Source: Vitrella brassicaformis CCMP3155
Lineage: Eukaryota; Protista; Chromerida
Assembly (NCBI GenBank): GCA_001179505.1
Contig: CDMY01000908.1
Coordinates: 1 to 64,000, forward strand
Length of the DNA stretch: 64,000 bases
Reading direction: 5' to 3'
Under the pieces are notes generated by a model that was not told the DNA's origin, searched no databases, and was given only the letters and a program-made list of their open reading frames with translations. How positions within the stretch are numbered: position 1 is the first letter of the stretch; each line of letters starts with the position of its first letter. The translations under genes and the position numbers were made by a program. Below are positions 3,353 through 15,492 of this stretch, piece by piece.

Positions 3353-6300
3353 ATGCCCCGCCTCTTCTTTCAGCGCTGCGTAGCCCTGCTCTTATCTCTC
3401 CTGCTCACTGCTGCTGCGTTCACCGACACTTTCACTGACGAAGCTCCACAAGTGGACTTGGAGCCCTCAGGAGTGAATGATGGTGCTGCCGACGACAACG
3501 GATGGGCCAGCGATGAGCACGTGCTGTGGCTGGATGAGTTTGATGCGTTGCTGGCGAGTAATTCGTCCCTGACGCTAGATGCGGCAGATGACGCCATCGA
3601 CGAAGGGGCACAGGAGGACCCCGCCGTGGCAGAGCTGACGTTCTTCCCCAACATTACAGATGACATCCTCATTCGCATAATAATGGGATCGGCAGACCCT
3701 GACTTTGCGGACCTTCATCAGCGGCTCATCGCTGCAACCGAGGCGCCAGTGAGGCACGTTGCAAGCGAGGCCTACGGCTACCTGGCCTTGCTCTACCTGT
3801 TCGGTGTGCCTGATGAGCGCGGGAATGTCGATTTCCCTCATGGCTGGCCGCGAGATGTGGACAAGGCTGTCGAGTGCATCATCAAGGGCAGCAGACTGTC
3901 CTGCGGCACCTGTTATATGCTGGCAGGTACGTGTGTGCGTCAGCAACAATGCCGGCGTGTATTTGTGCGACGAGGACACACGCCAATGGAGTGGATTTGT
4001 GTGCGCATTCAGGGTTTCTGTTTTCCATTGGGTACCCGCCGCTAGTGCGGTCATCTCACGGCTGGACGGTCGACCACGGCTCGGGCTATCAGAGTATCTA
4101 CATGATGTTCCAGGCGGTGGAGGTGGCGCCGCCCTACAGATCGCCACACACACGCGAGCTGCCCAAGGAGCGGCAAGGCTATGACCTCCCCACCATGGCG
4201 TATTCTCTGGCGCAACACGCGGGGGCCGTCATGGGCAGGCTGAGCTTGTCGTACTACTTCCGTCACGAGCTGGCACAGCAGGGCTACAAATACCGGCATC
4301 TCGCCAGATCTGCATCGACCAGCATGCACCGGCCGCCTATCAATCTGACAGCCACCATCCCACCGCACTTACTCCAAATGGATGGCGACTCCTTGGCGAT
4401 ACTCAATGCCACGACAGCCGCCGAGATTGGCGCGGCGGCGCATGCAGCGCTGCACTGCCAGGTGGCTCTTGAGGCCCTGCTCGGTGTGGCGTCTGACTCG
4501 CTCAATGAGGGCTCTGACCTGCCGGCCGCCGAGCTGATAACGAACAGGCTGGAATGGAAGCAGTCTCAGTCGCGCTGGAGGGAGGACTATGGCTCCGAGC
4601 AGCCGAGGTATGGCAGCCTCGAGTATGCGCAGCTCGTTGAGGATTTGGCGCTGCGTGAAGACCCTGACGGTCTCGCTGCCCTCGGCGAACTGGTAAGGTG
4701 ACAGGTAAACAGACTGGCACATGCAATGAGCCAATAATTCTGTCTGTCTCTTTGGCTTTCTGTCAGTATTATCACGGCCTCAGAGAAGGTGACTTTAGCG
4801 GGTGTGCCAAAACAATGCACCTATTACGCTGGCTGTGCTTCGTCGTCAGGTGGTATTCCGCGTGACATCCCACAGGCCATGGCCTACTGGCACCGTGCCA
4901 GTGTTCTCGGCCACTGTGGGGCTGCCATGGCTAGAGCGCTCGCACACATCGACGGTGCATATGGCTCGACGAACGACTCTTCCCCCTACCTTGCGCAGGT
5001 GGCGACTAAGTCTGACGACCAATCCCAGCGCCACATGGCGAAACACTACCTGAGCAAGTTCGGCATCGGCGGATCGGAGAGGAATCTGACCAGGGCGGGC
5101 TTACACCTGGAGGCGGCCGCAGCTCTCGGCGACAGCAGCGCTCAGCTGCTGATCGGCCACGCGTATGCGGGCGCCGATACGGACGTGTTGCCCGCAGACG
5201 GCCTCAATACGACGAGGGCGCTGCTGTGGTACGACAAGGCGTCTGCTGCCGGCCGTATAGTGGCGAAATATAACGCGGGAGTGTTGATTCTGCAAGGGGC
5301 GGATGTGCGGCATAGAACAGAGCTCCAGAGGTGCGAGGCCGCCTTTCCTCTCTTCTTCGAGGTGGCCATGAACCACGAAACGGTCAAGCTGCTCTTCGCC
5401 CACGCGAGGCGGGCCTACACTCTCGGCGACGTGTCGGGAGCTCTGTTGCGGGCCATGCTGCTCTCTGAGATAGGTCATCCACTGGCACACGAGAGCGCAG
5501 CCGAGCTGTGGCGACAATGGGCGCAGAAGCCGCCGTTGCACATGCAGATACGGCAGCAGGACCTCACCGTGCCCCACGAGGTGGAAGCCAACTCGACAGC
5601 AGCAGCCAATGTGACCAGTGACCCAGCCGGCGTGCGTCACTACCTTCACTGTTGGGCCCGGCCGGATGGCTATTACACTCGGCTGCGGTGGGAGGGCATC
5701 GCCGCCCATGACGCAGAAGGAGCCGACGACCAGAGCGCCGCTCAGCAGGTGTCACCCCAGGACCAGCAGCCGGAGGGTGATGCTGATGGCGATTATATTG
5801 CAGATGGCCGACAGCTGACGGCAGTCAGTCCCGAGACCGCCACGAGTGAGTCGCTGCGTCACCTGCCCCCCGATGCCGCCGTGTGCAGCTTTTACTTCGC
5901 GAAGCGGGCCGCTGTGGCCGGGAGTGTTGCAGCAATGCATCGAGTGGCCAGGGCATATAGGGAGGGCTCGTTGGGCGTCATTCAGGTGGGCACATGCAGT
6001 GCACCCGAGGGGGGAGGGAGGGAACAAACACTTGTATGTGGGATGACTGATGGGACCCTCTTCCTTTCATTCGTGTGTGGGTGTGTGTCAGAATTTGACC
6101 ACATCCTATGAGTGGACTTGTCTTGCTGCCGCGATGGGGGACAGTCGCGGCCGATATGAGAAGGCTGTCATGACCGAGAAGGGCATTGGACGGCCGTCAA
6201 ACACCACTGAAGCATACCAGGTAGGTGACACCCACGCAGAGGAGAACCCAGACACACGAGCCCTCACCTATCTATCCACAATTGCTGCCTGCATTCAGAT

Positions 6301-7363
6301 GTACGGTAGCCTCTTAAAGGAGGGGTCAGTCGCGCCAGTGGCGGGTGCGCTGGTCGCCCTCGCCGAGGCGTCCATCGGCTGGCTCAGCCGCCGTGTCGCT
6401 CTCAGCTGGCGGGCCCTCCATACCTACCACACACGACTCATCGACAGCCGCCTACCGGACGGCCGTGACAGCGAGCAGCAGCAGCCGAGCAAGGCGGTGT
6501 GGGTGCCGCTGCAGCAGGAGGGGCCGCTGGCTGTGCAGACGTATCAGCAGCATCCTGCGGAGCCAACGTCCTCGGAGAAGGGCAAGGCGGCTGATGTGGC
6601 TGTGAGTGACGGCCAAGCCAGCCGCCAGGAAGGCGCGGACACCGACACAGTGGGCCCGATACCCCTGTATGTCGCTTTGGGATATGAAGATTCGCCGGAA
6701 CGCTTCACACAGGTGCGCGCACCACGGACAGTGCAACAAACACATGTGTGTATGCTCCTCTCGCTGTGTTGATGGATTGCATTGGCTGGTTCGTGGCTGG
6801 ATATATGGGTGCAGCTCAACTCGACGCTCCGGCTGATGATGCTGTGGGCGGTTTCCTTTGCGATTGTCCTACTCTTCAGCTGTCGAGTGCATGTCGCAGA
6901 GGCCCAGAGGTACTACACACACACACACACACAGCCTGCCTGCGTGCCTGTCCATCCGTCCACCCCACCCCCATGCAGGCGCGCCCATCCACGTGTGGCT
7001 CACCGACCTGAGGCCTCGTATGCCCCCCAGCCACCGTCCATATCCTCATCGGCACACAGCGGCTCCGCCTCCCCCACCAGCACCCACGACGGCCCCTCCC
7101 CCACCAATGCCCCCACCCTCATTGACAACGACCCTGCCGTGCCGGAGCACCTGCACTCTCTCACCGAGAGGCGCCGGTGGACCGCACACGGCCAGGGCAA
7201 TGGGAGCGGTGAGGATGCCATGTCGTCGGCTGCATGCGAATCGCCGGCCAGCCGACAGAACGACCCTGAGATACGCGAGAGGGGCGAGAGGGGTGCTGGC
7301 GACACTCCCACCGATGCAGGGGCGGGCGGTGCGGGTCTGCTGGAGGGCAAGAAGATGTCTTGA
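3353..7363 (+). CDS. Sel1-like (SLR) repeat type I membrane protein, SEL1L/Hrd3-like
   Basis: Signal peptide MPRLFFQRCVALLLSLLLTAAAF. SLR motifs include AYGYLALLYLFG..RDVDKAVE, GIPRDIPQAMAYWHRASVLGH, ERNLTRAGLHLEAAAALGDSSAQLLIG, RALLWYDKASAAG and AYQMYG. C-terminal TM LMMLWAVSFAIVLLF precedes a Pro/Ser-rich tail ending TGA 7361-7363. Confidence 0.8.
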
Positions 7364-8047
7364 CGGACGGATGGGCGATAGAAAGATGAATCGGGAGGAC
7401 ATTCACACGTACAGACCAATCGACCGACCATCATTTTGTATGTGTTGGTTGTGTATCTATCGGCTGTCTGTGTGTATTCGGGAGGGCGGGGGTGGCGTGT
7501 ACATATGTGGGTGGGACGGCAAGCTGGCTATGCAGGACGCCAGATTGGGAACAGAGAGAGAGATTGGCTGAGAGAGAACGGGATGGATGGATGCCCTATT
7601 TGTCTGTGTCTGTCTGTCTGTCTGTCTGGATGGCTGGATGGCTGGATGGCTGAATGGCTGGGTCGCTTTTGTGTGTGTGTGTGTGTGTGTGTGATGAGAG
7701 GATGAATGTGGCGGGGTCATGTAGAAAGGCATTTCGTGTCCATGTGTATGTGTGTGTGTTGTTGTCTGTCTGTCTGTCTGTCTGTGTGCTATCTATAGCA
7801 ATCAACCAAGGAAGGGTACTGACCGACCCCATCCAGTACATATATAATTAATAAGAGGGACGGGCAGGCTGGATTGATCTGGGCATTCCTACACACATCA
7901 ATTCAACATGGCCGGCCATGTGATCTCTAAACAGTCACTCGCCAATCCGTCCGTAGGTCCAAAACGCCCAATGCAATCAGTCAGTCGACACAGCAGTCCA
8001 AAGAATCGTCTCAAGACAGTGAAGGCCCTAGCTAAGTATCGTCTCCC

Positions 8048-11000
8048 TTAGATTTCTCTAGTGTGTCCACACGATAAGCCCTGCAATGCAAAGACACACA
8101 GACCCCGCCACATACGTCTCTCTGACCCCCTCTCTCTCGCCCGCCTTAATTCGCTCGTACCTTTTCCATCAGCTGCGTGGGGCTGTGCAGGTCCATTCCC
8201 CCTCTCGATGCGCTCACAGGCGTCCTCAGCCGGGGGCTGGGCCCTGCACCGGCTGTCGGGGATTTGAGCACCTCCCCTGCAGCTGGCTGGCAGTGCGTGC
8301 CTTGAGCCTGTTGAAGATCGGTGACCTTGAGCACCGGCGTCTCCGCTAATCGTTTTCTTCTTCGCCAGCCGAGGCAGCTGCAGGCGATGAGTGCGCCGAG
8401 GATCAACCCAGCTGCGATGACAGCTGCGGATATGAGCCAGCCGGCATTGGCTGAAGACTCATCTCTGTCGGGCTGAGGTGCGCGCGAGACGGCTGGCGTA
8501 TTGATGGTGGGGACTGCATGGCAGGAAGGAACAGACAGGTGTGTCTCCATGGATTGCGCCATGCTCGCTGGCTGACCGCATGTCTGTGTGGTCTCATCAA
8601 ATGTGTATGGCGGATAGCAGCGGCAGGAGAATAATGTGTCGCCCAGCGCAACACATCTGCCGTCGCGGCATGGGTTCGCATAACACGGGCTGCCCTCCAA
8701 TGCTGCGCGCACACAACACACAAAAGCATCACAGAGAGACATCAATCGCATCCCTTCCTCTGCGTGTGCATGTCTGGGCTGATCTGCTTACGATCGCATC
8801 GTCTTGTGGTCGTGTTGAAGGCGTAGAACTCAGGACATTTGCATGTGTAGGAGCCGACGGTGTTCTCGCACGTAGCCCCCACCACGTAGGAACAGCCGTC
8901 CCAGCCGCGGGCACATTCGTCGATGTCTGCAGACACACCCACACCCACACCCACACAGATATGGAGAGCGTAGGCCTGCACGCAATGCCATATGGGTTAC
9001 CTCGGCAGAGCCCATCTCCGTTGTCTTGGTACCCTGGTGGGCAATCGCATCTCGTCCCATCAAGGCCAGCATTCACACACACACGCGGGGGCGGACACAC
9101 GACTGCCGCGCACCTACCCCTCTCTACACCACACCACAAACACACGAGCATCCACTCCCACAAAATGTTATACTGGTGCTTTTGTCAGGTTTCTCACCCC
9201 TGACGAGCCGAAAGGAGCCCACGGCAGCCTGGTAGCTCCTCCAGTGATACCGATAATCCCCAATCCCTTCGGCGCCATCGACCGGCGGCACAAAGCCACA
9301 CACCGTCACCGCACCGGAGCCCACCCCGTGTGCCTGCGGATCGATCGTCACGTTGCATGCGGCCATGGGCACCCCGTCGACAAGTCGCCTTCCAGGCCGA
9401 CAAGGGATCACATGGTCGACCAGCGGCTCTGTCGGCGCATCGCTGCCGCACCGCGCATTTGGGGTTGGATGGATCAGCAGCTGGAACATCGGCCTCGGGG
9501 CGACAGCAGAGAAGGAGAGGGAGCACATGCCGTTGGCAGGACAGGCCAGCCGATCGCCGCCCACAAAGCCGCTAGCCACACAAGGTAGCTTTCCGGCTCT
9601 GTCTGTCGTCATACACTGCTTTGGTCCAGCCACGGGTGTCGGACAGCAATCGGGGTCCTCGCAAAGGCCCACGGAACACTTTCCACATCGTTTTGGGCAG
9701 CACAGGGCTCCGCCCGCAGACGGCAGGCCGCCCATACTCTGCATACATGTCAGTGCTTGGTCAGAGGGCGGATCTGCAAGGAACCATCAAACATACAACT
9801 CGATACTTCCTGATGCCAAAAGGAGCGAGCTCCTTTGTTCACACCATCGAGACAGGGCGCCTGTCCTGACGCAAAACACTGTCGTGTCTCCCTTTCCGCA
9901 AAGATGAATTTCGGGCAGCAGTTGCGTACCCCTCCTGGCCGATCTTCGCATCCGCCCTGCTGACAGACGCCGCACTCCATCGGGCAGCACACAGCAGAGC
10001 CGCGGTCCGCTCCAGTCGACACAATCCCACCGGCCCAGAGACACGTGCCAAATGTAGTTCTGCTCTTGTCGATCATGCACGGGCTGCGGCCGACCTCATC
10101 GCACATGCGGCCGGTGGGAATGACGGAGGGACAACACTCTCTGTGTGTCCAGTGGCTCCTGCTCTCACAGTCAATCTCGCTGCACACGCCACACCGTGCA
10201 GGGCAGCACGCGGCCAAGCCATTGTTTGTGGCTGTCTGCTCAAGGATGCCGCCGGCGGACGCGCACGACATCACAGCCGTGTTCTTGCTCACTGAAGAGC
10301 ACAGCACATGCAGTCATTGCTTGTTTGGCCCTCGAATTGTCGCGTCTTACTTTTCTTTCTCCAGTCAGTGAGTGCGAGAGCCCCTCTGCCGTCGACGACG
10401 CCCCATCCTGCACGAAAGCTGTATTTGTCGTCCATTGGTGTGGCTTTCCGGGGGGAGACGGCTGTTAATCGAACGGCCAGGTAGAGGTCGCGTGGTGCCA
10501 GGGAAGGGTCTTGCTGCTTCATAAGGGCCATGAGGGCGCCAACGTGAGGAGCTGCCGCGCTGGTGCCCTAAAACCGGGGAGACAGGACAGATGTGCAAAG
10601 ACATGGATATGGCCGTGGGCGGCTTACAAAGAAGTTGGGATAGCCAGTGGCGTCTGTGTCCCCCCAGCCGCCGAAGAACGTGGTGTCCACTCCATCAGGA
10701 GCCACCACATCAGGGGTATAGACCAGCGCTGGTGGGTCCATCCGTCGGCCTTCGTTGTCAAAGTGGCTCGGAATTGGACCGCCAGACGAGGCACGATTCG
10801 GCGTATGTGTGCCATTGCTGACCCAGTCAGTCGTGAAGTACTGATAGTTCGACGCCCCCACGGAAAAGGCCTCCGGGATGTTGACGTGTCCGAAAGCTGT
10901 CGGTGACTGGGTGTCGTACGTGAGTGCGGTCTTGTCGACGCCATTGTTTCCTAAATCGATCCACTTCAGGATGACTGGGTCGGCTACAAGAGGTCCATTG

Positions 11001-12557
11001 ACGAGCTCGATCATGAGTAAGAAAGTCTTGTTGAGATAGTTGCTGTTTGTCCAGTAGAGGACCTCGACGGGATCGGCTCCGCGATTGTCCCATGTGGACT
11101 TGGCAAGGATGTCGCTCATGTTCTTAGTCGTCGCATAGCTCGGCAGAGCCAAATAGATGTCGAAATCGTGGAGCGGTCCAGGGGGGCCATACGTTGAGAA
11201 TTGAGGGGCAGTCCATTGGAAGACGAGATAAAGCCGCCCATCTGGCGCAATGGAGATGGTTTGGTACACATCAACATTTCCTGGAGAGTAATCAAAGTCG
11301 TGAAGGATGCCGAGGCCCGGTCCTTGGACCGCTGAGCTTCGAAATGGCGCTTCATACGAGTTGAGGCCCTCGTTGCCCGTAGCTGAGACATATGCGACGC
11401 CGTGCTCAAATGCACTCTTGACTGACCGAGACACGAGGCTCTGACGGCAGAAAGACACAGTTGTGTGTACGATGTCGTGCGACACGTGGTTTGCGATTGA
11501 CTGACCGACTTCGTGAAAGAAACTCTCATGGACGTGCACCACGTCATCCACAATGATATCGCATCCCACATCAACCAGCTGATCTATGGCGGCTGAGAAC
11601 TTGGCCAGGCCACCGAAGCCTGTCGCATAGTACAGCTGAGCACCCGGGGCAATGTCATGGACGATCTGCAAACGGACAAAATGGACATCTGTTGATGGAA
11701 AAGGGATGTCCCTGACTGACAGACAATCTACCTGTAGCACAGCCCTGCCTTCATCCCTCCCCAAGGAATAATCCGATACCACCTGAACCTGGGGAAGGTC
11801 TCCCGAGCTCCTGTCGTCAGCGCCGGTCGGCGGCAGCCCCTTCTGGTCGAAACTGTCCGCAATCACGCCAACCTTCACGCCACTTCCATCCACTCCATAT
11901 TTCTCACGAGTCGACCTCGTCACGTTTATGCTGCCAGAACCCTGAGTGATTGTCTTGCCTGCACGGGTGAATGACCTCGATAGCTCTACTCGATGGATGC
12001 CGGCCCCTGCACTGAGGCTCTCAATCGACGGGATGTCGCTCATGCTGAGCCAGCCTGAGCATACTCGGCCTCGACAGACGGCGTCCTTCAGACGGATGCT
12101 GCCGCAGCTGTCCTCAGGGTAGGGCTCGTGAAGGAAGCAGTCAACTACACAATAGCCTGCCTTGTCGACTCTGAATCAAGACAACAACGCATGCAAGAGC
12201 GTGCTGTGCAAGCGCATCCCCGCCCATTCGTTACCTCAGAGCGAACTCTCTGTCTTCTTCCGTCTCGCTGCCTGACGGCGCGACTGTCTCTGACGCTTGC
12301 AAGACCCGCCTGTACGCGCACCACTCATGGTAAAAGGCTCTCAGGGCCGAGTCCAAAATGACATTCTTGTCCATCTCACGAAGCCTCTGGCAATCGGCCT
12401 CCGCCATTTTGAAAGCGAAGCCACCTGCAAGAAAAGCAGAGTCTGACCATCATTGAATTCAGCAAGATGAGGTCCTACCGATGAGCCCCAAGGACAGAAG
12501 CAGCCGTGAACACCACACACAGCTCTTGAATCTCCTTTTTGTCACTCTCAGCCTCAT
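8048..12557 (-). CDS. Membrane-anchored subtilase (S8/S53-like, bacterial type) with three Cys-rich repeats, EGF/cbEGF domains, TM helix and cytosolic tail
   Basis: Leader MRLRVTKRRFKSCVWCSRLLLSLGLIG (ATG at 12557). Protease motifs: DGSGVKVGVIADSF (Asp), DEGRAVLQIVHDIAPGA, SATGNEG (oxyanion Asn) and FF|GTSAAAPHVG (Ser, across an intron near 10570-10620). Then CCP.C G.C..CC repeats, cbEGF DIDECARGWDGC..CENTVGSYTCKCPEFY, EGF CYANPCRDGRC..FSCRCYPPY, TM WLISAAVIAAGLILGALIACSCLGW and stop-transfer RRRKR. The last exon (stop at 8048) is less certain. Confidence 0.85.
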
Positions 12558-12599
12558 TTCGCGACCCCGGAGATAATTGGTGTCCATGCTATCAGAAGG

Positions 12600-12960
12600 A
12601 GAGACATCAGTCAATCGCACAGTAGCCAGCCTTGTCGACTCTGCATGCAAAGACCGTACTGTGCGAGCACATCCCCGCATCCATGACCTCTTCTTCCTCA
12701 TCACTGACTGGATGTGGCTGACAGTGTCTCTGACGCTTGTAAACCCACCTGTGTCAGCCGAGTCCGAGATGTCCGTCATTCGTGTGTCACGCAGCTTCTG
12801 GCAGTCGGCATCCGTCGTGGAAAGCCATCTGCAAGAAAGATACTAGGAGAGATAGAGTATGACCGTCATTTGAATTCAGCAAGATGAGGTCCTACCGATG
12901 AGCCCCGCGCAGATCAGAATCGCCAGACCAGCAGAGACCACACACAGCTCGTCGCGACGG
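12600..12960 (-). pseudogene. Degenerate tandem duplicate of the 5' exons of the subtilase gene
   Basis: 12600-12905 is homologous to about 12130-12490, sharing tgaattcagcaagatgaggtcctaccgatgagcccc, gccttgtcgactctg and tgtctctgacgcttg. The upstream copy carries a frameshift and a deletion relative to the open copy. Confidence 0.7.
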
Positions 12961-13036
12961 GCCCCAAAACGCAGTGGGAGGTTTGCCAGGCTCTCCCTCC
13001 CTCTCCTTCCTGCATTCCTTTCCGAAAGAGGAGAAG

Positions 13037-15492
13037 ATGCAGCCTTCGATTTGTCCTCCATGTCCTCTATCGCCATACCGTGGAACTGCGACACTCCCAC
13101 CATCGGCTGGCGATGCCATCGAGCCATCTGGAGAAGAGGGCGACGGCATCAGATTCCCACAGCAGCAAACAATGGATGCTTTGGGCGACCAGCAAGAGAA
13201 TGACAACGATTCGGAGCAAGATAAGGGGGCAGCTGGTGAGTGCGTCCAGACGGCAGCAGAGCCGGGCCATGAGCGCATTCCGCCCTATCGGTCCATGCTC
13301 TCCACTTCCACGGCACACACGACAACGGCGATTGCCATTGACGACTACAGCAAGGGAGGCGACCGGTCAATAGGCGCCCCTGACGTCATCCATCGTCGGG
13401 AGGAGAAGGCGATTGCTGCCTCGGTGGCTGAGTACGTGAGGGGGCACATCACAAAGAACAACACTGGCTGTGCATGTGATCGTCTCACTGCAGGTTCAGA
13501 GGGGTTGCCGGATACCCGGCAAGCTTCGAAGAATGGCCGACGACTGTCAAGTATAAGACCGTTCGAGGGCTCGATGGTGGCACGAGAGAGGTGGTCATGG
13601 GGGCGCACTTCGATCCCGGCCCATTATGGTTTACCGTCAAGCGGGTCCTCAAAGTGATCATGTGGCAGGTGTGCGTGGCGTTTGCTTGCGCCTTGCTTGG
13701 CGCTTCCTTGGCTGCTGTGACCTGGATGATATGCATCAGCCCTAAGATGAAGATCGTGTGGATTCTGCTTGATGTCCTGCGTCGGGTGGCGATGATTTGC
13801 TTTGCCGGTCTTTTCTATGCGACGGTGATGGGGGGCTCGGATGCCAATCAACGTTTGAATCTCGTCTGGAGAACTTGGTGGGTCTTTGCTTTTCCGATGG
13901 TCTTGTCTCTTCTTATCAGCATTTCACACCATCTACAGCTGCCGATCTTGTGGAGAAGTTGCATCCTGGCTCCCACTTGGTGGGCCACTATGGCTGCATT
14001 TTTGCCTTTCACCTACTTCCGCATGTCGGCAAAATTCTGGAACATTCAAAAGGCCAATCTGTATGCAGCCAAAGTCACCCTCATTTGGGCCATTCCCTGT
14101 AAGAAGTCAGTCAAGAAGTCAGTCAGTTCATCCACTCTTTCGGCGAATGCACACTGACGCTGTGTGTGTGCGCGCGTGATGGTCTGTATGTGTGTGTAGG
14201 TGTTATGGGAATGCTTTTTGTGAGTTTTATGGAGTCCATCATACAAGCGGCTAATACAGATCAGGCCAGGACGCAGTATGTTGTCATCGAATTTATTGTA
14301 ATCGGTTGGCCTTTTGTAAGCTTGGCGTGTAAGACAGCTCGATCGTTACAGGTAAATCATATGCCGGAACTTCCTCTCAATCATGTCTCTCATATTGTGA
14401 CCAGGAGGGTCCGCCGACGACCAATGGATGCCTGGTGACTTATGTAGCTTTGAACTACGCCATCGGCCCCCGTACTTTGCAGAGTAAGTGAAAGAGAACC
14501 TTTCCTTGTCATGAAGAGCTGTTGTGACTTTCTGCAGTCCAAATGGTGTCGTTCAACTACAAGATGCTTATCAGTCTCATTTTCTCTCTCATGGATCTCG
14601 TGAGCGACGTTTGTCTGCCTTATTCGGTGGTATTGTATATTACAATTAAGCGCAAATGTGCCGGACCAAAGCCAGAAGACGGCAGTCATGAGGGCTGGAG
14701 AAATCTGCATCAAGAGGAGAAGACGACAGGCAAGGTCAACTATTCGTTCCGAGATCGAATGCAAGCTTCTACCGACTCAGTCATGCGATCAGCGTCCACT
14801 TTCAACCTCCCCTCAGCCATGTCGAGGCTTGCGGCGTCACCCCGATATCTCAGGTGTAAAGCTCAGGATTCGTGAGGCTTGAGGTCAGACGCTGACTAAT
14901 ATCTGCGTCTCTGTGTGGGAATCAATCAATCAGGCTGCTTTCGGATCAAGTGTTCAATTACCGTAAGCAAAATAGTCAAACCCGGCGGATCGAGCACCGA
15001 ATAGATGTCAGACTGCTGTGCCTTTCCTGATGTTTGGGGGTCTGTAGATATGGCGGAGATCACAGCGCTACTGTATCCCAACCTTGCCGCCCTTATGGCC
15101 GCATTCATCACTACCAAGTCCTACATCGGCCTCGTTCAAGGCGTGGCGGCGCTGTGCGTTCTCTTGCTCATCGAGACTTTCATGGAGCTTATTCTTTACG
15201 TGGTCGGCTTTTCAACACCTCAGTTTGGAAAAATCTGGGAGTACGTGTGTGTATGGGTGTGTGTATGCAGATATTGCTGAGAACGAACAATCTTTCCTTG
15301 TGTCGAGCAACGTTTGAGCCGGGGGTCATGAAAGTGAGAATTCACGCCCTGCTGTGGATTTGTCTCGTCGTTTTCTCGTACCTTTCGGCGGACTTCCTTG
15401 GATACATCGGCACAGGAATGAGATACCAGAAGTGGGCCGGCGAGCGCTGGTCGGTACACTGCAAAGAGACCTGCATTTGCAGTGCAAAGTGA
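13037..15492 (+). CDS. Orphan polytopic membrane protein (about 11 hydrophobic segments), multi-exon
   Basis: The phase-2 intron 13432-13493 joins ORF 12974 to ORF 13591. Later GT-AG exons keep frame through hydrophobic segments such as VCVAFACALLGASLAAVTW, YVVIEFIVIGWPFVSLAC, LISLIFSLMDLVSDV, VAALCVLLLIETFMELILYVVGF and IHALLWICLVVFSYL, ending TGA at 15492. The start codon is uncertain (13037 or 13164). Confidence 0.7.

What the first reader, a model, noticed from the sequence alone, without database searches (positions are those of the whole stretch)
8048..12557. Bacterial-type subtilase fused to Cys-rich repeats, EGF modules and a transmembrane anchor
Seen: one spliced gene running signal peptide - propeptide - protease - three Cys-rich repeats - EGF/cbEGF - TM - basic cytosolic tail. 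The protease motif string (DGSGVKVGVIADSF, DEGRAVLQIVHDIAPGA, DIIVDDV, APDGVDTTFF, FFGTSAAAPH) matches a family I recall from cyanobacteria and other bacteria rather than eukaryotic kexin or pyrolysin types. Established: apicomplexans use TM-anchored subtilisins (SUB2) as sheddases and EGF+TM proteins as microneme adhesins. Inference: a horizontally acquired protease domain that gained introns and eukaryotic surface modules, giving a cell-surface protease-adhesin chimera. I do not know this architecture as described.
Basis: partly seen in the sequence, partly recalled or inferred. Interest (0 to 1): 0.78.

Follow-up and report, generated by a model that had tools for sequence, protein, structure and literature searches.

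The report
Mosaic membrane subtilase gene of Vitrella
This is a real, transcribed gene of the alga Vitrella brassicaformis that joins a bacterial-type protease domain to cysteine-rich, EGF and membrane-anchor modules, but it is one of about 21 related copies and the only RNA evidence available carries a splice that breaks the reading frame.

Summary
The architecture is real. One spliced 4,104-nt RNA contig links every exon from the protease to the EGF-TM end. The gene is the annotated Vitrella brassicaformis protein CEM36777.1 (1,275 aa).

- **Bacterial affinity.** The protease domain has a full subtilisin fold (Z about 29). Its closest relatives are all bacterial S8 peptidases at 35-43% identity.
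- **Catalytic residues.** The whole subfamily lacks the classical catalytic His. An invariant Glu (motif DEGR) sits where the His helix starts; Asp, Asn and Ser are kept.
- **Not a lone chimera.** Vitrella holds about 21 paralogous loci. A single origin fits the data (held-together tree 38 lnL units better, p-AU 0.77). Any transfer therefore predates the family's expansion.
The "signal peptide" exon is internal to the transcript, downstream of a degenerate tandem duplicate of the 5' exons. A fourth intron in the protease region (65 nt) shifts the frame and gives a stop after 11 codons. An in-frame donor lies 4 nt upstream but was not seen.

The public annotation matches the RNA at neither place. 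Full-length protein production, catalysis and presence in other eukaryotes remain untested.

The parts
12896..13130 (-). Upstream exon U1, a degenerate copy of the signal-peptide exon. Its 5' end is not determined, and it overlaps the first exon of a divergent plus-strand gene.
   Evidence: The joint 12828->12896 has CT..AC ends. A 37-nt stretch is identical to 12453-12489.
12749..12828 (-). Upstream exon U2, a copy of the exon 12235-12424.
   Evidence: Joints; 72% identical direct repeat; frames.
12479..12640 (-). Exon holding ATG 12557 (and ATG 12587) and the hydrophobic stretch LLLSLGLIG. It has two alternative acceptors, at 12640 (depth 33.7) and 12588 (depth 16.6).
   Evidence: The public annotation skips this exon.
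12235..12424 (-). Exon encoding an N-terminal segment with no family match.
11732..12170 (-). Exon with the C-terminal part of the bacterial-type prodomain, the catalytic Asp (11855-11857) and the DEGR motif with Glu at 11750-11752.
   Evidence: Alignment A1, motif table and AF2 model.
11666..11731 (-). In-frame 66-nt intron.
   Evidence: RNA joint. All homologues show a 22-column gap here.
11506..11665 (-). Exon with the IVHDIAPGA and IIVDDV motifs.
11441..11505 (-). 65-nt intron (GTCAGT..CAG) that shifts the frame and gives a stop 11 codons later. The alternative in-frame donor at 11509 would give a 69-nt intron.
   Evidence: Contig record arithmetic, translation and a 23-column gap in all homologues.
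10628..11440 (-). Exon with the oxyanion Asn (11372-11374), a beta-sandwich insert, and the invariant His of the FGH motif (10886-10888).
10351..10567 (-). Exon with the catalytic Ser motif GTSAAAPH (Ser at 10559-10561).
   Evidence: PF00082 at 28.7 bits against a cut-off of 21.8; mycosin model at E 9e-8.
9845..10291 (-). Exon with Cys-rich repeats 1 and 2 (8-Cys module).
9198..9773 (-). Exon with Cys-rich repeat 3 and a 117-aa orphan segment (about 9199-9558).
9001..9123 (-). EGF-like module 1.
   Evidence: EGF, cEGF. The flanking intron 8927-9000 was inferred from the contig record lengths.
8792..8926 (-). Calcium-binding EGF module (DIDEC...).
   Evidence: EGF_CA at 40.8 bits against a cut-off of 27.
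8577..8702 (-). EGF-like module 3.
   Evidence: PF00008 at 21.7 bits.
8161..8513 (-). Exon with the stalk, the transmembrane helix (about 8368-8439), the RRRKR stop-transfer motif and the cytosolic tail.
   Evidence: Hydropathy 2.58. The joint 8513->8577 is also seen in a second study, run X6.
8048..8080 (-). Last coding exon with the stop codon at 8048-8050. The 3' UTR runs below 7800.

Best explanation
The locus is a genuine nuclear gene of Vitrella brassicaformis, annotated as CEM36777.1. On paper it encodes a type I membrane protein with these parts, in order:
- a short hydrophobic leader;
- a bacterial-type prodomain;
- a subtilisin-fold domain carrying a large beta-sandwich insert, as in clostridial Csp proteases;
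- three copies of a chromerid 8-Cys module;
- an orphan segment;
- three EGF modules;
- a transmembrane helix and a basic tail.

The protease domain belongs to a large, uncharacterised bacterial branch of family S8. In that branch the classical His is absent. The conserved set is Asp (SDSF), Glu (DEGR), Asn (GN) and Ser (GTSAAAPH).

The most likely chemistry, by inference, is a serine peptidase in which the Glu (or, less likely, the invariant His of the FGH motif) acts as general base. The prodomain would act as folding aid and inhibitor. The Cys-rich/EGF stalk would hold the enzyme outside the cell.

The domain most likely entered the chromerid lineage from bacteria once, then gained introns and multiplied to about 21 loci that picked up different extracellular modules. 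This copy is a long-branch member.

In the one RNA data set, the dominant mRNA has a leader built from duplicated exons and uses a donor 4 nt downstream of the in-frame one. Full-length protein can therefore come only from a minor isoform, if at all.
For: - **One transcript.** A single contig with 12 GT..AG introns spans all exons.
- **Fold.** The AF2 model has pLDDT 85.4. VIA-align gives Z about 29 and rmsd 2.3-2.7 Å over about 250 residues against subtilisin BPN' and Tk-SP. It aligns 368 residues with CspB.
- **Bacterial affinity.**
- **Conserved residues.** D63, E98, N174, H336 and S425 are invariant in 52 sequences, and the window copy keeps them all. No invariant His lies between the Asp and the Asn. 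The helix begins at E98. Profile-profile alignment of the N-terminal halves gives 95.7% probability.
- **Family.** 21 loci. Holding all Vitrella copies together gives a tree 38 lnL units better than the free search, p-AU 0.77.
- **Intact coding sequence.** With the 69-nt intron the open frame is unbroken over about 1,228 codons.
Against: - The assembled mRNA uses the 65-nt intron and hits a stop after 11 codons. No contig shows the in-frame donor.
- All transcripts start upstream of the putative signal-peptide exon. In the major form a long upstream ORF runs through it.
- Nothing shows catalytic activity for any member of this S8 branch, and no solved structure matches its N-terminal half by sequence.
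- The equivalence of Glu and His rests on model secondary structure and motif spacing, not on coordinates. The hhalign run placed the gap differently.
- The tree backbone is unresolved, and the window copy is a long branch of 1.2-2.2 changes per site.
- Other eukaryotes could not be searched properly.
Confidence: 0.6

Rival explanations
1. It is a transcribed but decaying copy, a young pseudogene. The 5' tandem duplication and the shifted donor mean that no full-length protein is made. The intact downstream frame only reflects how recent the damage is.
For: The only assembled mRNA has a premature stop. The leader contains degenerate duplicated exons with upstream ATGs. The copy has a long terminal branch. 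Several paralogues are clearly degenerate or fragmentary. A follow-up note on another Vitrella gene reports a similar frame break in the mRNA (s1-242790; not checked here).
Against: Every family-invariant residue is kept, and about 2.4 kb of downstream exons hold no stop or frameshift. An in-frame GT donor sits 4 nt upstream. Contig assembly keeps only the stronger of two near-identical paths, so a minor productive isoform would be hidden.
Confidence: 0.3
2. The domain is a non-catalytic pseudoprotease used as a binding module, like CspC of Clostridioides. The protein would then be an adhesin or receptor rather than an enzyme.
For: The classical His is absent from the whole subfamily. The best Foldseek matches include the pseudoproteases CspC and CspA.
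Against: Asp, Glu, Asn and the GTSAAAPH serine are invariant or more than 90% conserved across bacterial phyla. That pattern is typical of an active site. Sedolisins show that Glu can replace His in this fold (established knowledge; abstract of PMC11593635).
Confidence: 0.25
3. The family is old in eukaryotes and inherited vertically, or was passed between eukaryotes. Its bacterial look only reflects poor eukaryote sampling in the searches.
For: Hit lists were cut at 120-150 rows, and only about a quarter of the proteins carry names. Vitrella paralogues themselves rank below more than 100 bacterial proteins, so other eukaryotic copies could be hidden in the same way.
Against: No sequence from a eukaryote source other than Vitrella appears among the top 120 hits of two different paralogues. 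The Atlas clusters are 91-100% bacterial. The family occurs in more than 509 bacterial genomes of many phyla.
Confidence: 0.15
4. The protease part and the EGF-TM part are separate genes, or the protease is bacterial contamination of the assembly.
For: None found.
Against: One RNA contig crosses every junction, and the protease part itself holds four spliceosomal introns. A known apicomplexan-type gene lies in the same window.
Confidence: 0.02

Closest known systems
Uncharacterised bacterial S8 peptidases with the DEGR motif (for example Thiothrix, Leucothrix, Coleofasciculus, Blastopirellula, Spirosoma and an Alcaligenaceae MAG)
   Same: They share the prodomain, the subtilisin fold with a beta-sandwich insert, and the same conserved Asp/Glu/Asn/His/Ser set. 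Identity is 35-43% over nearly the whole domain.
   Different: The bacterial proteins carry bacterial tail domains: FG-GAP/VCBS, RTX, PKD, PPC, Big_9, or the T9SS sorting signal. They have no introns, EGF modules or eukaryotic TM anchor.
Clostridial Csp germination proteases (CspB, and the pseudoproteases CspA and CspC)
   Same: They are the best whole-domain structural matches: a subtilase core with a central beta-sandwich insert and a retained prodomain (368 residues aligned with CspB, Z 28.8).
   Different: Identity is only 13-16%. CspB has a normal Asp-His-Ser triad. There is no sequence-level match.
Apicomplexan SUB2, the TM-anchored subtilisin sheddase
   Same: Both are type I membrane topology with an extracellular subtilase domain and a short cytosolic tail (established knowledge for SUB2; shown here by architecture).
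   Different: SUB2 is a classical Asp-His-Ser subtilisin. This domain falls in a bacterial branch without the His, and no SUB2-like protein appeared among its relatives. Vitrella also has classical S8 genes elsewhere.
Sedolisins (family S53, Ser-Glu-Asp)
   Same: They have the same clan fold, with a Glu at the start of the helix that carries His in subtilisin. The spacing from the Glu to the APGA strand is as I recall it for kumamolisin (from memory, not tested).
   Different: There is no Asp four residues after the Glu. The oxyanion residue is Asn, not Asp. The subtilisin-type Asp after strand 1 is kept. No S53 structure appeared among the top 50 fold matches.
Other Vitrella members of the same family (for example P0111, PAN/Apple + S8)
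   Same: They have the same protease subfamily, introns, and fusion to eukaryotic extracellular modules.
   Different: The module sets differ. None of the other 20 loci lies on a contig that matched the 8-Cys repeat. Pairwise identity is only about 33-35%.

Membership tests
Peptidase family S8 (subtilases, clan SB) | Subtilisin alpha/beta fold | tested here: met
   The AF2 model (pLDDT 85.4) aligns to subtilisin BPN' residues 1-275 with Z 28-29 and rmsd 2.3-2.5 Å over about 250 residues.
Peptidase family S8 (subtilases, clan SB) | Pfam PF00082 above the gathering score | tested here: met
   The annotated protein scores 42.7 bits against a cut-off of 21.8, but only profile positions 171-288 match. 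The N-terminal half gives no Pfam hit.
Peptidase family S8 (subtilases, clan SB) | Catalytic Ser in a GTS-x-A-x-P motif, and an oxyanion Asn | tested here: met
   GTSAAAPH and GNEG are present. Both are invariant in 52 homologues. The Asn region aligned to fervidolysin.
Peptidase family S8 (subtilases, clan SB) | Catalytic Asp after strand 1 | tested here: met
   D63 is invariant and lies directly after strand 57-62 of the model. hhalign places it within one residue of the DTG Asp.
Peptidase family S8 (subtilases, clan SB) | Catalytic His (HGTH motif) between the Asp and the Asn | tested here: not met
   No invariant His lies in that segment in 52 or 101 homologues. Invariant DEGR occupies the start of the matching helix. 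The residue-level equivalence of Glu and His is inferred.
Sedolisins (S53) | Glu-x3-Asp pair on the catalytic helix, and an Asp in the oxyanion site | tested here: not met
   The residue four after the Glu is Val or Met. The oxyanion position is Asn.
Sedolisins (S53) | Pro-kumamolisin type activation domain | tested here: not met
   Pfam gave no such hit on the N-terminal region.
Bacterial DEGR branch of S8 (no published name known to me) | The shared motif set SDSF / DEGRAM / IVDDV / AAGN / HDFD / FGH / GTSAAAPH, plus the beta-sandwich insert | tested here: met
   All motifs are present in the window copy. Alignment covers 87-98% of the 491-aa frame.
Apicomplexan SUB2-type sheddases | Classical subtilisin domain orthologous to SUB2 | tested here: not met
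   All closest relatives are bacterial, and the His is absent.
Apicomplexan SUB2-type sheddases | Single C-terminal TM anchor with a cytosolic tail | tested here: met
   Hydropathy is 2.58 at residues 1174-1192, followed by RRRKR.
EGF / calcium-binding EGF modules | Pfam EGF and EGF_CA above the gathering score | tested here: met
   EGF scores 45.6 bits (cut-off 21.5) in three stretches. EGF_CA scores 41 bits (cut-off 27).
Secreted / type I membrane protein | N-terminal signal peptide on the translated product | tested here: inconclusive
   The hydrophobic stretch follows ATG 12557, but that exon is internal in all transcripts seen. The annotated protein starts elsewhere and lacks the stretch.

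The most novel reading that the evidence does not exclude
The DEGR subtilases may be a third catalytic type in clan SB. They would have an S8-like fold, Asp and oxyanion Asn, but a Glu as general base. They are widespread in bacteria and were taken up once by the chromerid lineage. There they radiated into about 21 mosaic surface proteins, each tethering this unusual protease to a different adhesion-module stalk. This gene would be the EGF/TM-anchored form, kept at a low level by an unproductive tandem splice donor.
Probability: 0.3. Interest if true: 0.7.

Novelty: new variant of a known kind. Interest (0 to 1): 0.5.

Why it matters
Three things would follow if this holds.
- A large bacterial S8 branch that has swapped its catalytic His for Glu, with no solved structure or assay, is a concrete target for enzymology.
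- Chromerids are the free-living relatives of apicomplexan parasites. A bacterial protease that radiated there into mosaic surface proteins shows how extracellular protease-adhesin repertoires can be built by transfer plus module shuffling, in parallel with the unrelated SUB2 sheddases.
- The locus is a caution for annotation. The public protein model matches the RNA at neither the 5' end nor the fourth intron, and the dominant mRNA is out of frame.

Tried and rejected
- **Pfam, NCBIfam and PDB sequence searches.** On the 491-aa open frame alone they gave nothing useful. Only the Ser exon matched.
- **8-Cys repeat.** The Atlas feature search gave no lead (score 0.75) and Pfam gave no hit even at E 10. 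An AF2 model from 16 repeat copies reached only pLDDT 63, so I did not search folds with it.
- **Middle region.** A word search with residues 685-1020 found only the protein itself. Residues 900-1022 have no second copy in the genome.
- **hhalign.**
  - The family profile against a single classical Vitrella S8 fragment failed.
  - Against a classical S8 alignment it aligned only the Ser half.
  - Cutting both alignments to their N-terminal halves worked but did not settle the register at the His.
- **AU test.** It did not finish under the mixture model in three runs. I reran it with LG+G4 and fewer rows.
- **Shared introns.** I looked for shared intron positions among paralogues as independent support for one origin. 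Exon ends cluster near three sites but differ by one to several codons, so I make no claim.
- **Flanks of two paralogues (contigs C249, C323).** They gave no extra Pfam domain.
- **Other look-ups.** The look-up of encoding contigs had no record for the annotated protein. Paper searches found no description of this family in chromerids.
Full report
**What is there**

The window belongs to a genome of 72.7 Mb in 1,064 contigs. The protein encoded here is 99% identical to CEM36777.1 / A0A0G4GZX8 of Vitrella brassicaformis CCMP3155, 1,275 aa.

The gene lies on the minus strand. Laying public runs on 7800-13500 showed that run X4 holds only spliced sequence. One 4,104-nt contig crosses every junction from below 7800 up to about 12590. 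The introns, all GT..AG on the minus strand, are:

| Intron (window coordinates) | Length (nt) | Note |
|---|---|---|
| 8081-8160 | 80 | |
| 8514-8576 | 63 | junction also seen in a second study (run X6) |
| 8703-8791 | 89 | |
| 8927-9000 | 74 | inferred from the contig record lengths; a repeat was masked there |
| 9124-9197 | 74 | |
| 9774-9844 | 71 | |
| 10292-10350 | 59 | |
| 10568-10627 | 60 | |
| 11441-11505 | 65 | shifts the frame |
| 11666-11731 | 66 | |
| 12171-12234 | 64 | |
| 12425-12478 | 54 | |

So is contamination.

**Domain content**

I translated exon by exon with phase tracking, without building a joined sequence. The order is:
- an ATG at 12557 followed by a short hydrophobic stretch;
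- an unassigned segment;
- a prodomain-like stretch that aligns with the N-terminal region of bacterial homologues;
- the protease;
- three 8-Cys repeats;
- a 117-aa orphan segment;
- three EGF modules (EGF 45.6 bits, EGF_CA 41 bits);
- a strong TM helix followed by RRRKR;
- a 79-aa tail, with the stop codon at 8048-8050.

The 8-Cys module follows the pattern C-x3-GG ... CCP-x2-CG-x-CGG-x-GC ... CC ... C ... PC. It recurs at nine or more other Vitrella loci. At one of them, further reading frames hold what look to me like a malectin-like and a PAN-like domain; I read these by eye and did not scan them. The module has no Pfam model. The orphan segment has no second copy in the genome.

**The protease**

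Sequence searches place it in family S8, but only through its Ser half.

An AF2 model built on 52 homologues reached pLDDT 85.4. It aligns to the whole of subtilisin BPN' with Z about 29 and rmsd about 2.4 Å over 250 residues. It aligns to CspB over 368 residues, which includes a beta-sandwich insert of about 150 residues.

Across 52 sequences the invariant residues are D63, D97-E98, R100, D144-D145, N174, H336 and S425. The window copy keeps them all.

No invariant His lies between the Asp and the Asn, where subtilases carry it. The model's helix 98-109 starts at E98 and is followed by the APGA strand. That is the topological place of His64 and its helix.

I therefore read the active site as Asp / Glu / Ser with an Asn oxyanion residue. 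This equivalence is inferred. I could not read coordinates, and hhalign of the N-terminal halves (95.7% probability) placed the length difference before the helix rather than after it. It is not a sedolisin, because there is no Asp four residues after the Glu and the oxyanion residue is Asn.

**Relatives**

- The word search with the 491-aa frame returned bacterial S8 peptidases at E about 1e-50 and 33-37% identity. The named ones are Thiothrix, Leucothrix, Thiohalocapsa, Salinibacter and Binatia. One Vitrella paralogue ranked 111th.
- In the exhaustive search, the window's own protein came first. The next 149 cluster representatives had E 1e-57 to 1e-41. The seven I scanned, including P0121 itself, all matched S8; four of the six others carried typically bacterial accessory domains.
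- A second paralogue, P0111 (PAN/Apple + S8), also hits cyanobacterial and other bacterial proteins first, at 42-47% identity.
- The nearest Atlas clusters are 91-100% bacterial.
- More than 509 bacterial genomes from Pseudomonadota, Cyanobacteria, Bacteroidota, Rhodothermota, Planctomycetota, Acidobacteriota, Deinococcota and others encode a relative. The best is 39% identical, and no donor lineage stands out.

**A family, not a single chimera**

A profile search of the genome found matching exons at 21 loci on 18 contigs. Some are degenerate. Vitrella also has classical S8 genes elsewhere.

I built the tree from 14 Vitrella copies and 101 other sequences. The seven copies with under 400 filled columns were left out. 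The Vitrella copies fall into two supported clades plus three long single branches, one of which is the window copy. The backbone is unresolved.

Holding all Vitrella copies together gave a tree 38 lnL units better than the free quick search, with p-AU 0.77 (LG+G4, 60 rows). One origin followed by expansion is therefore at least as good as several transfers. Long-branch attraction could favour this result. Exon ends of the paralogues cluster near three sites but not at identical positions, so I draw nothing from them.

**Two problems with the coding model**

1. *The 65-nt intron.*
   - All homologues show a 23-residue gap at this place, which corresponds to a 69-nt intron with its donor at 11509.
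   - The RNA contig instead uses the GTCAGT donor at 11505, 4 nt downstream. The frame then shifts and stops after 11 codons.
   - X4 shows no coverage of the intron, and no second contig exists. Contig assembly keeps only the stronger of two near-identical paths, so a minor in-frame isoform cannot be excluded.
   - The public annotation restores the frame with a different acceptor at 11422. That deletes six residues of a conserved helix and is not supported by the RNA.
2. *The 5' region.*
   - The region from about 12138 to 12906 is a tandem duplication with a period of about 411-470 nt. It covers the leader exon, the next exon and the start of the third.
   - All transcripts come from upstream exons, at 12896 upward and at 12749-12828. 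They enter the ATG 12557 exon at acceptor 12640 (depth 33.7) or 12588 (depth 16.6).
   - In the major form, a long upstream ORF starting at ATG 13119 reads through the hydrophobic stretch. In the minor form that ORF stops, and ATG 12587 or 12557 could start the protein.
   - The annotation skips this exon altogether. The signal peptide is therefore plausible from the extracellular domain content, but not shown.

**Reading**

The downstream exons are intact and keep every family-invariant residue. This argues that the gene is, or very recently was, under constraint. I put 0.6 on a functional mosaic membrane subtilase made from a minor isoform, and 0.3 on a young transcribed pseudogene.

The bacterial origin of the family is likely but rests on incomplete eukaryote sampling. 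The protein searches list only 120-150 hits, and no eukaryote genome collection was available to me. Catalysis is untested for any member.

Other notes of this scan on the same genome report paralogues with Glu for His and with trefoil, PAN, MAM, SRCR and sushi fusions. I confirmed only the PAN case, through precomputed Pfam.

I sent no joined spliced model to any tool. Whole-protein steps used the public protein P0121.

Noticed in passing
window 12138-12906: This is a tandem duplication with a period of about 411-470 nt and copies 72-100% identical. It covers the first two coding exons and the start of the third. The upstream copy is out of frame in its homologous reading but is spliced into the mRNA leader. 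A contig in run X5 joins 12452 to 12870 through the shared 37-nt stretch, which is probably an assembly-graph shortcut rather than a real deletion.
   Followed up: partly
window 12986-13500 and beyond, plus strand: A divergent plus-strand gene lies here. It has a GT..AG intron at 13432-13493 and higher RNA depth than the subtilase gene. Its first exon overlaps the subtilase gene's upstream exon on the opposite strand, so the two transcripts are arranged head to head and overlap.
   Followed up: partly
window 11422-11505 and 12479-12640, compared with public protein CEM36777.1: The public gene model disagrees with the RNA contig at two places. It skips the exon 12479-12640, and it uses an acceptor 19 nt downstream of the real one, which removes six conserved residues.
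   Followed up: yes
L010 (contig C464, about 3779-5200 of that contig): Here two copies of the 8-Cys module lie in one open frame. An overlapping reading frame, and so probably a later exon of the same gene, holds a malectin-like and a PAN-like domain. This suggests the module is a general extracellular building block in Vitrella. Those two domains were read by eye and not scanned.
   Followed up: partly
genome-wide: Several paralogues of the DEGR subtilase family look degenerate. For example, contig C514 has Ala at the Ser position, contig C964 has lost the DEGR context, and contigs C295, C200 and C520 carry fragmentary copies.
   Followed up: partly
window 6850-7750: Long CA/TG-type microsatellite tracts lie just downstream of the gene's 3' end. 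They produce open frames rich in Thr-His and Cys-Val.
   Followed up: no
genome-wide: Vitrella also carries many exon matches to classical Asp-His-Ser subtilases on other contigs (53 matches to PF00082). The DEGR family is therefore an addition to a normal subtilase set, not a replacement for it.
   Followed up: no
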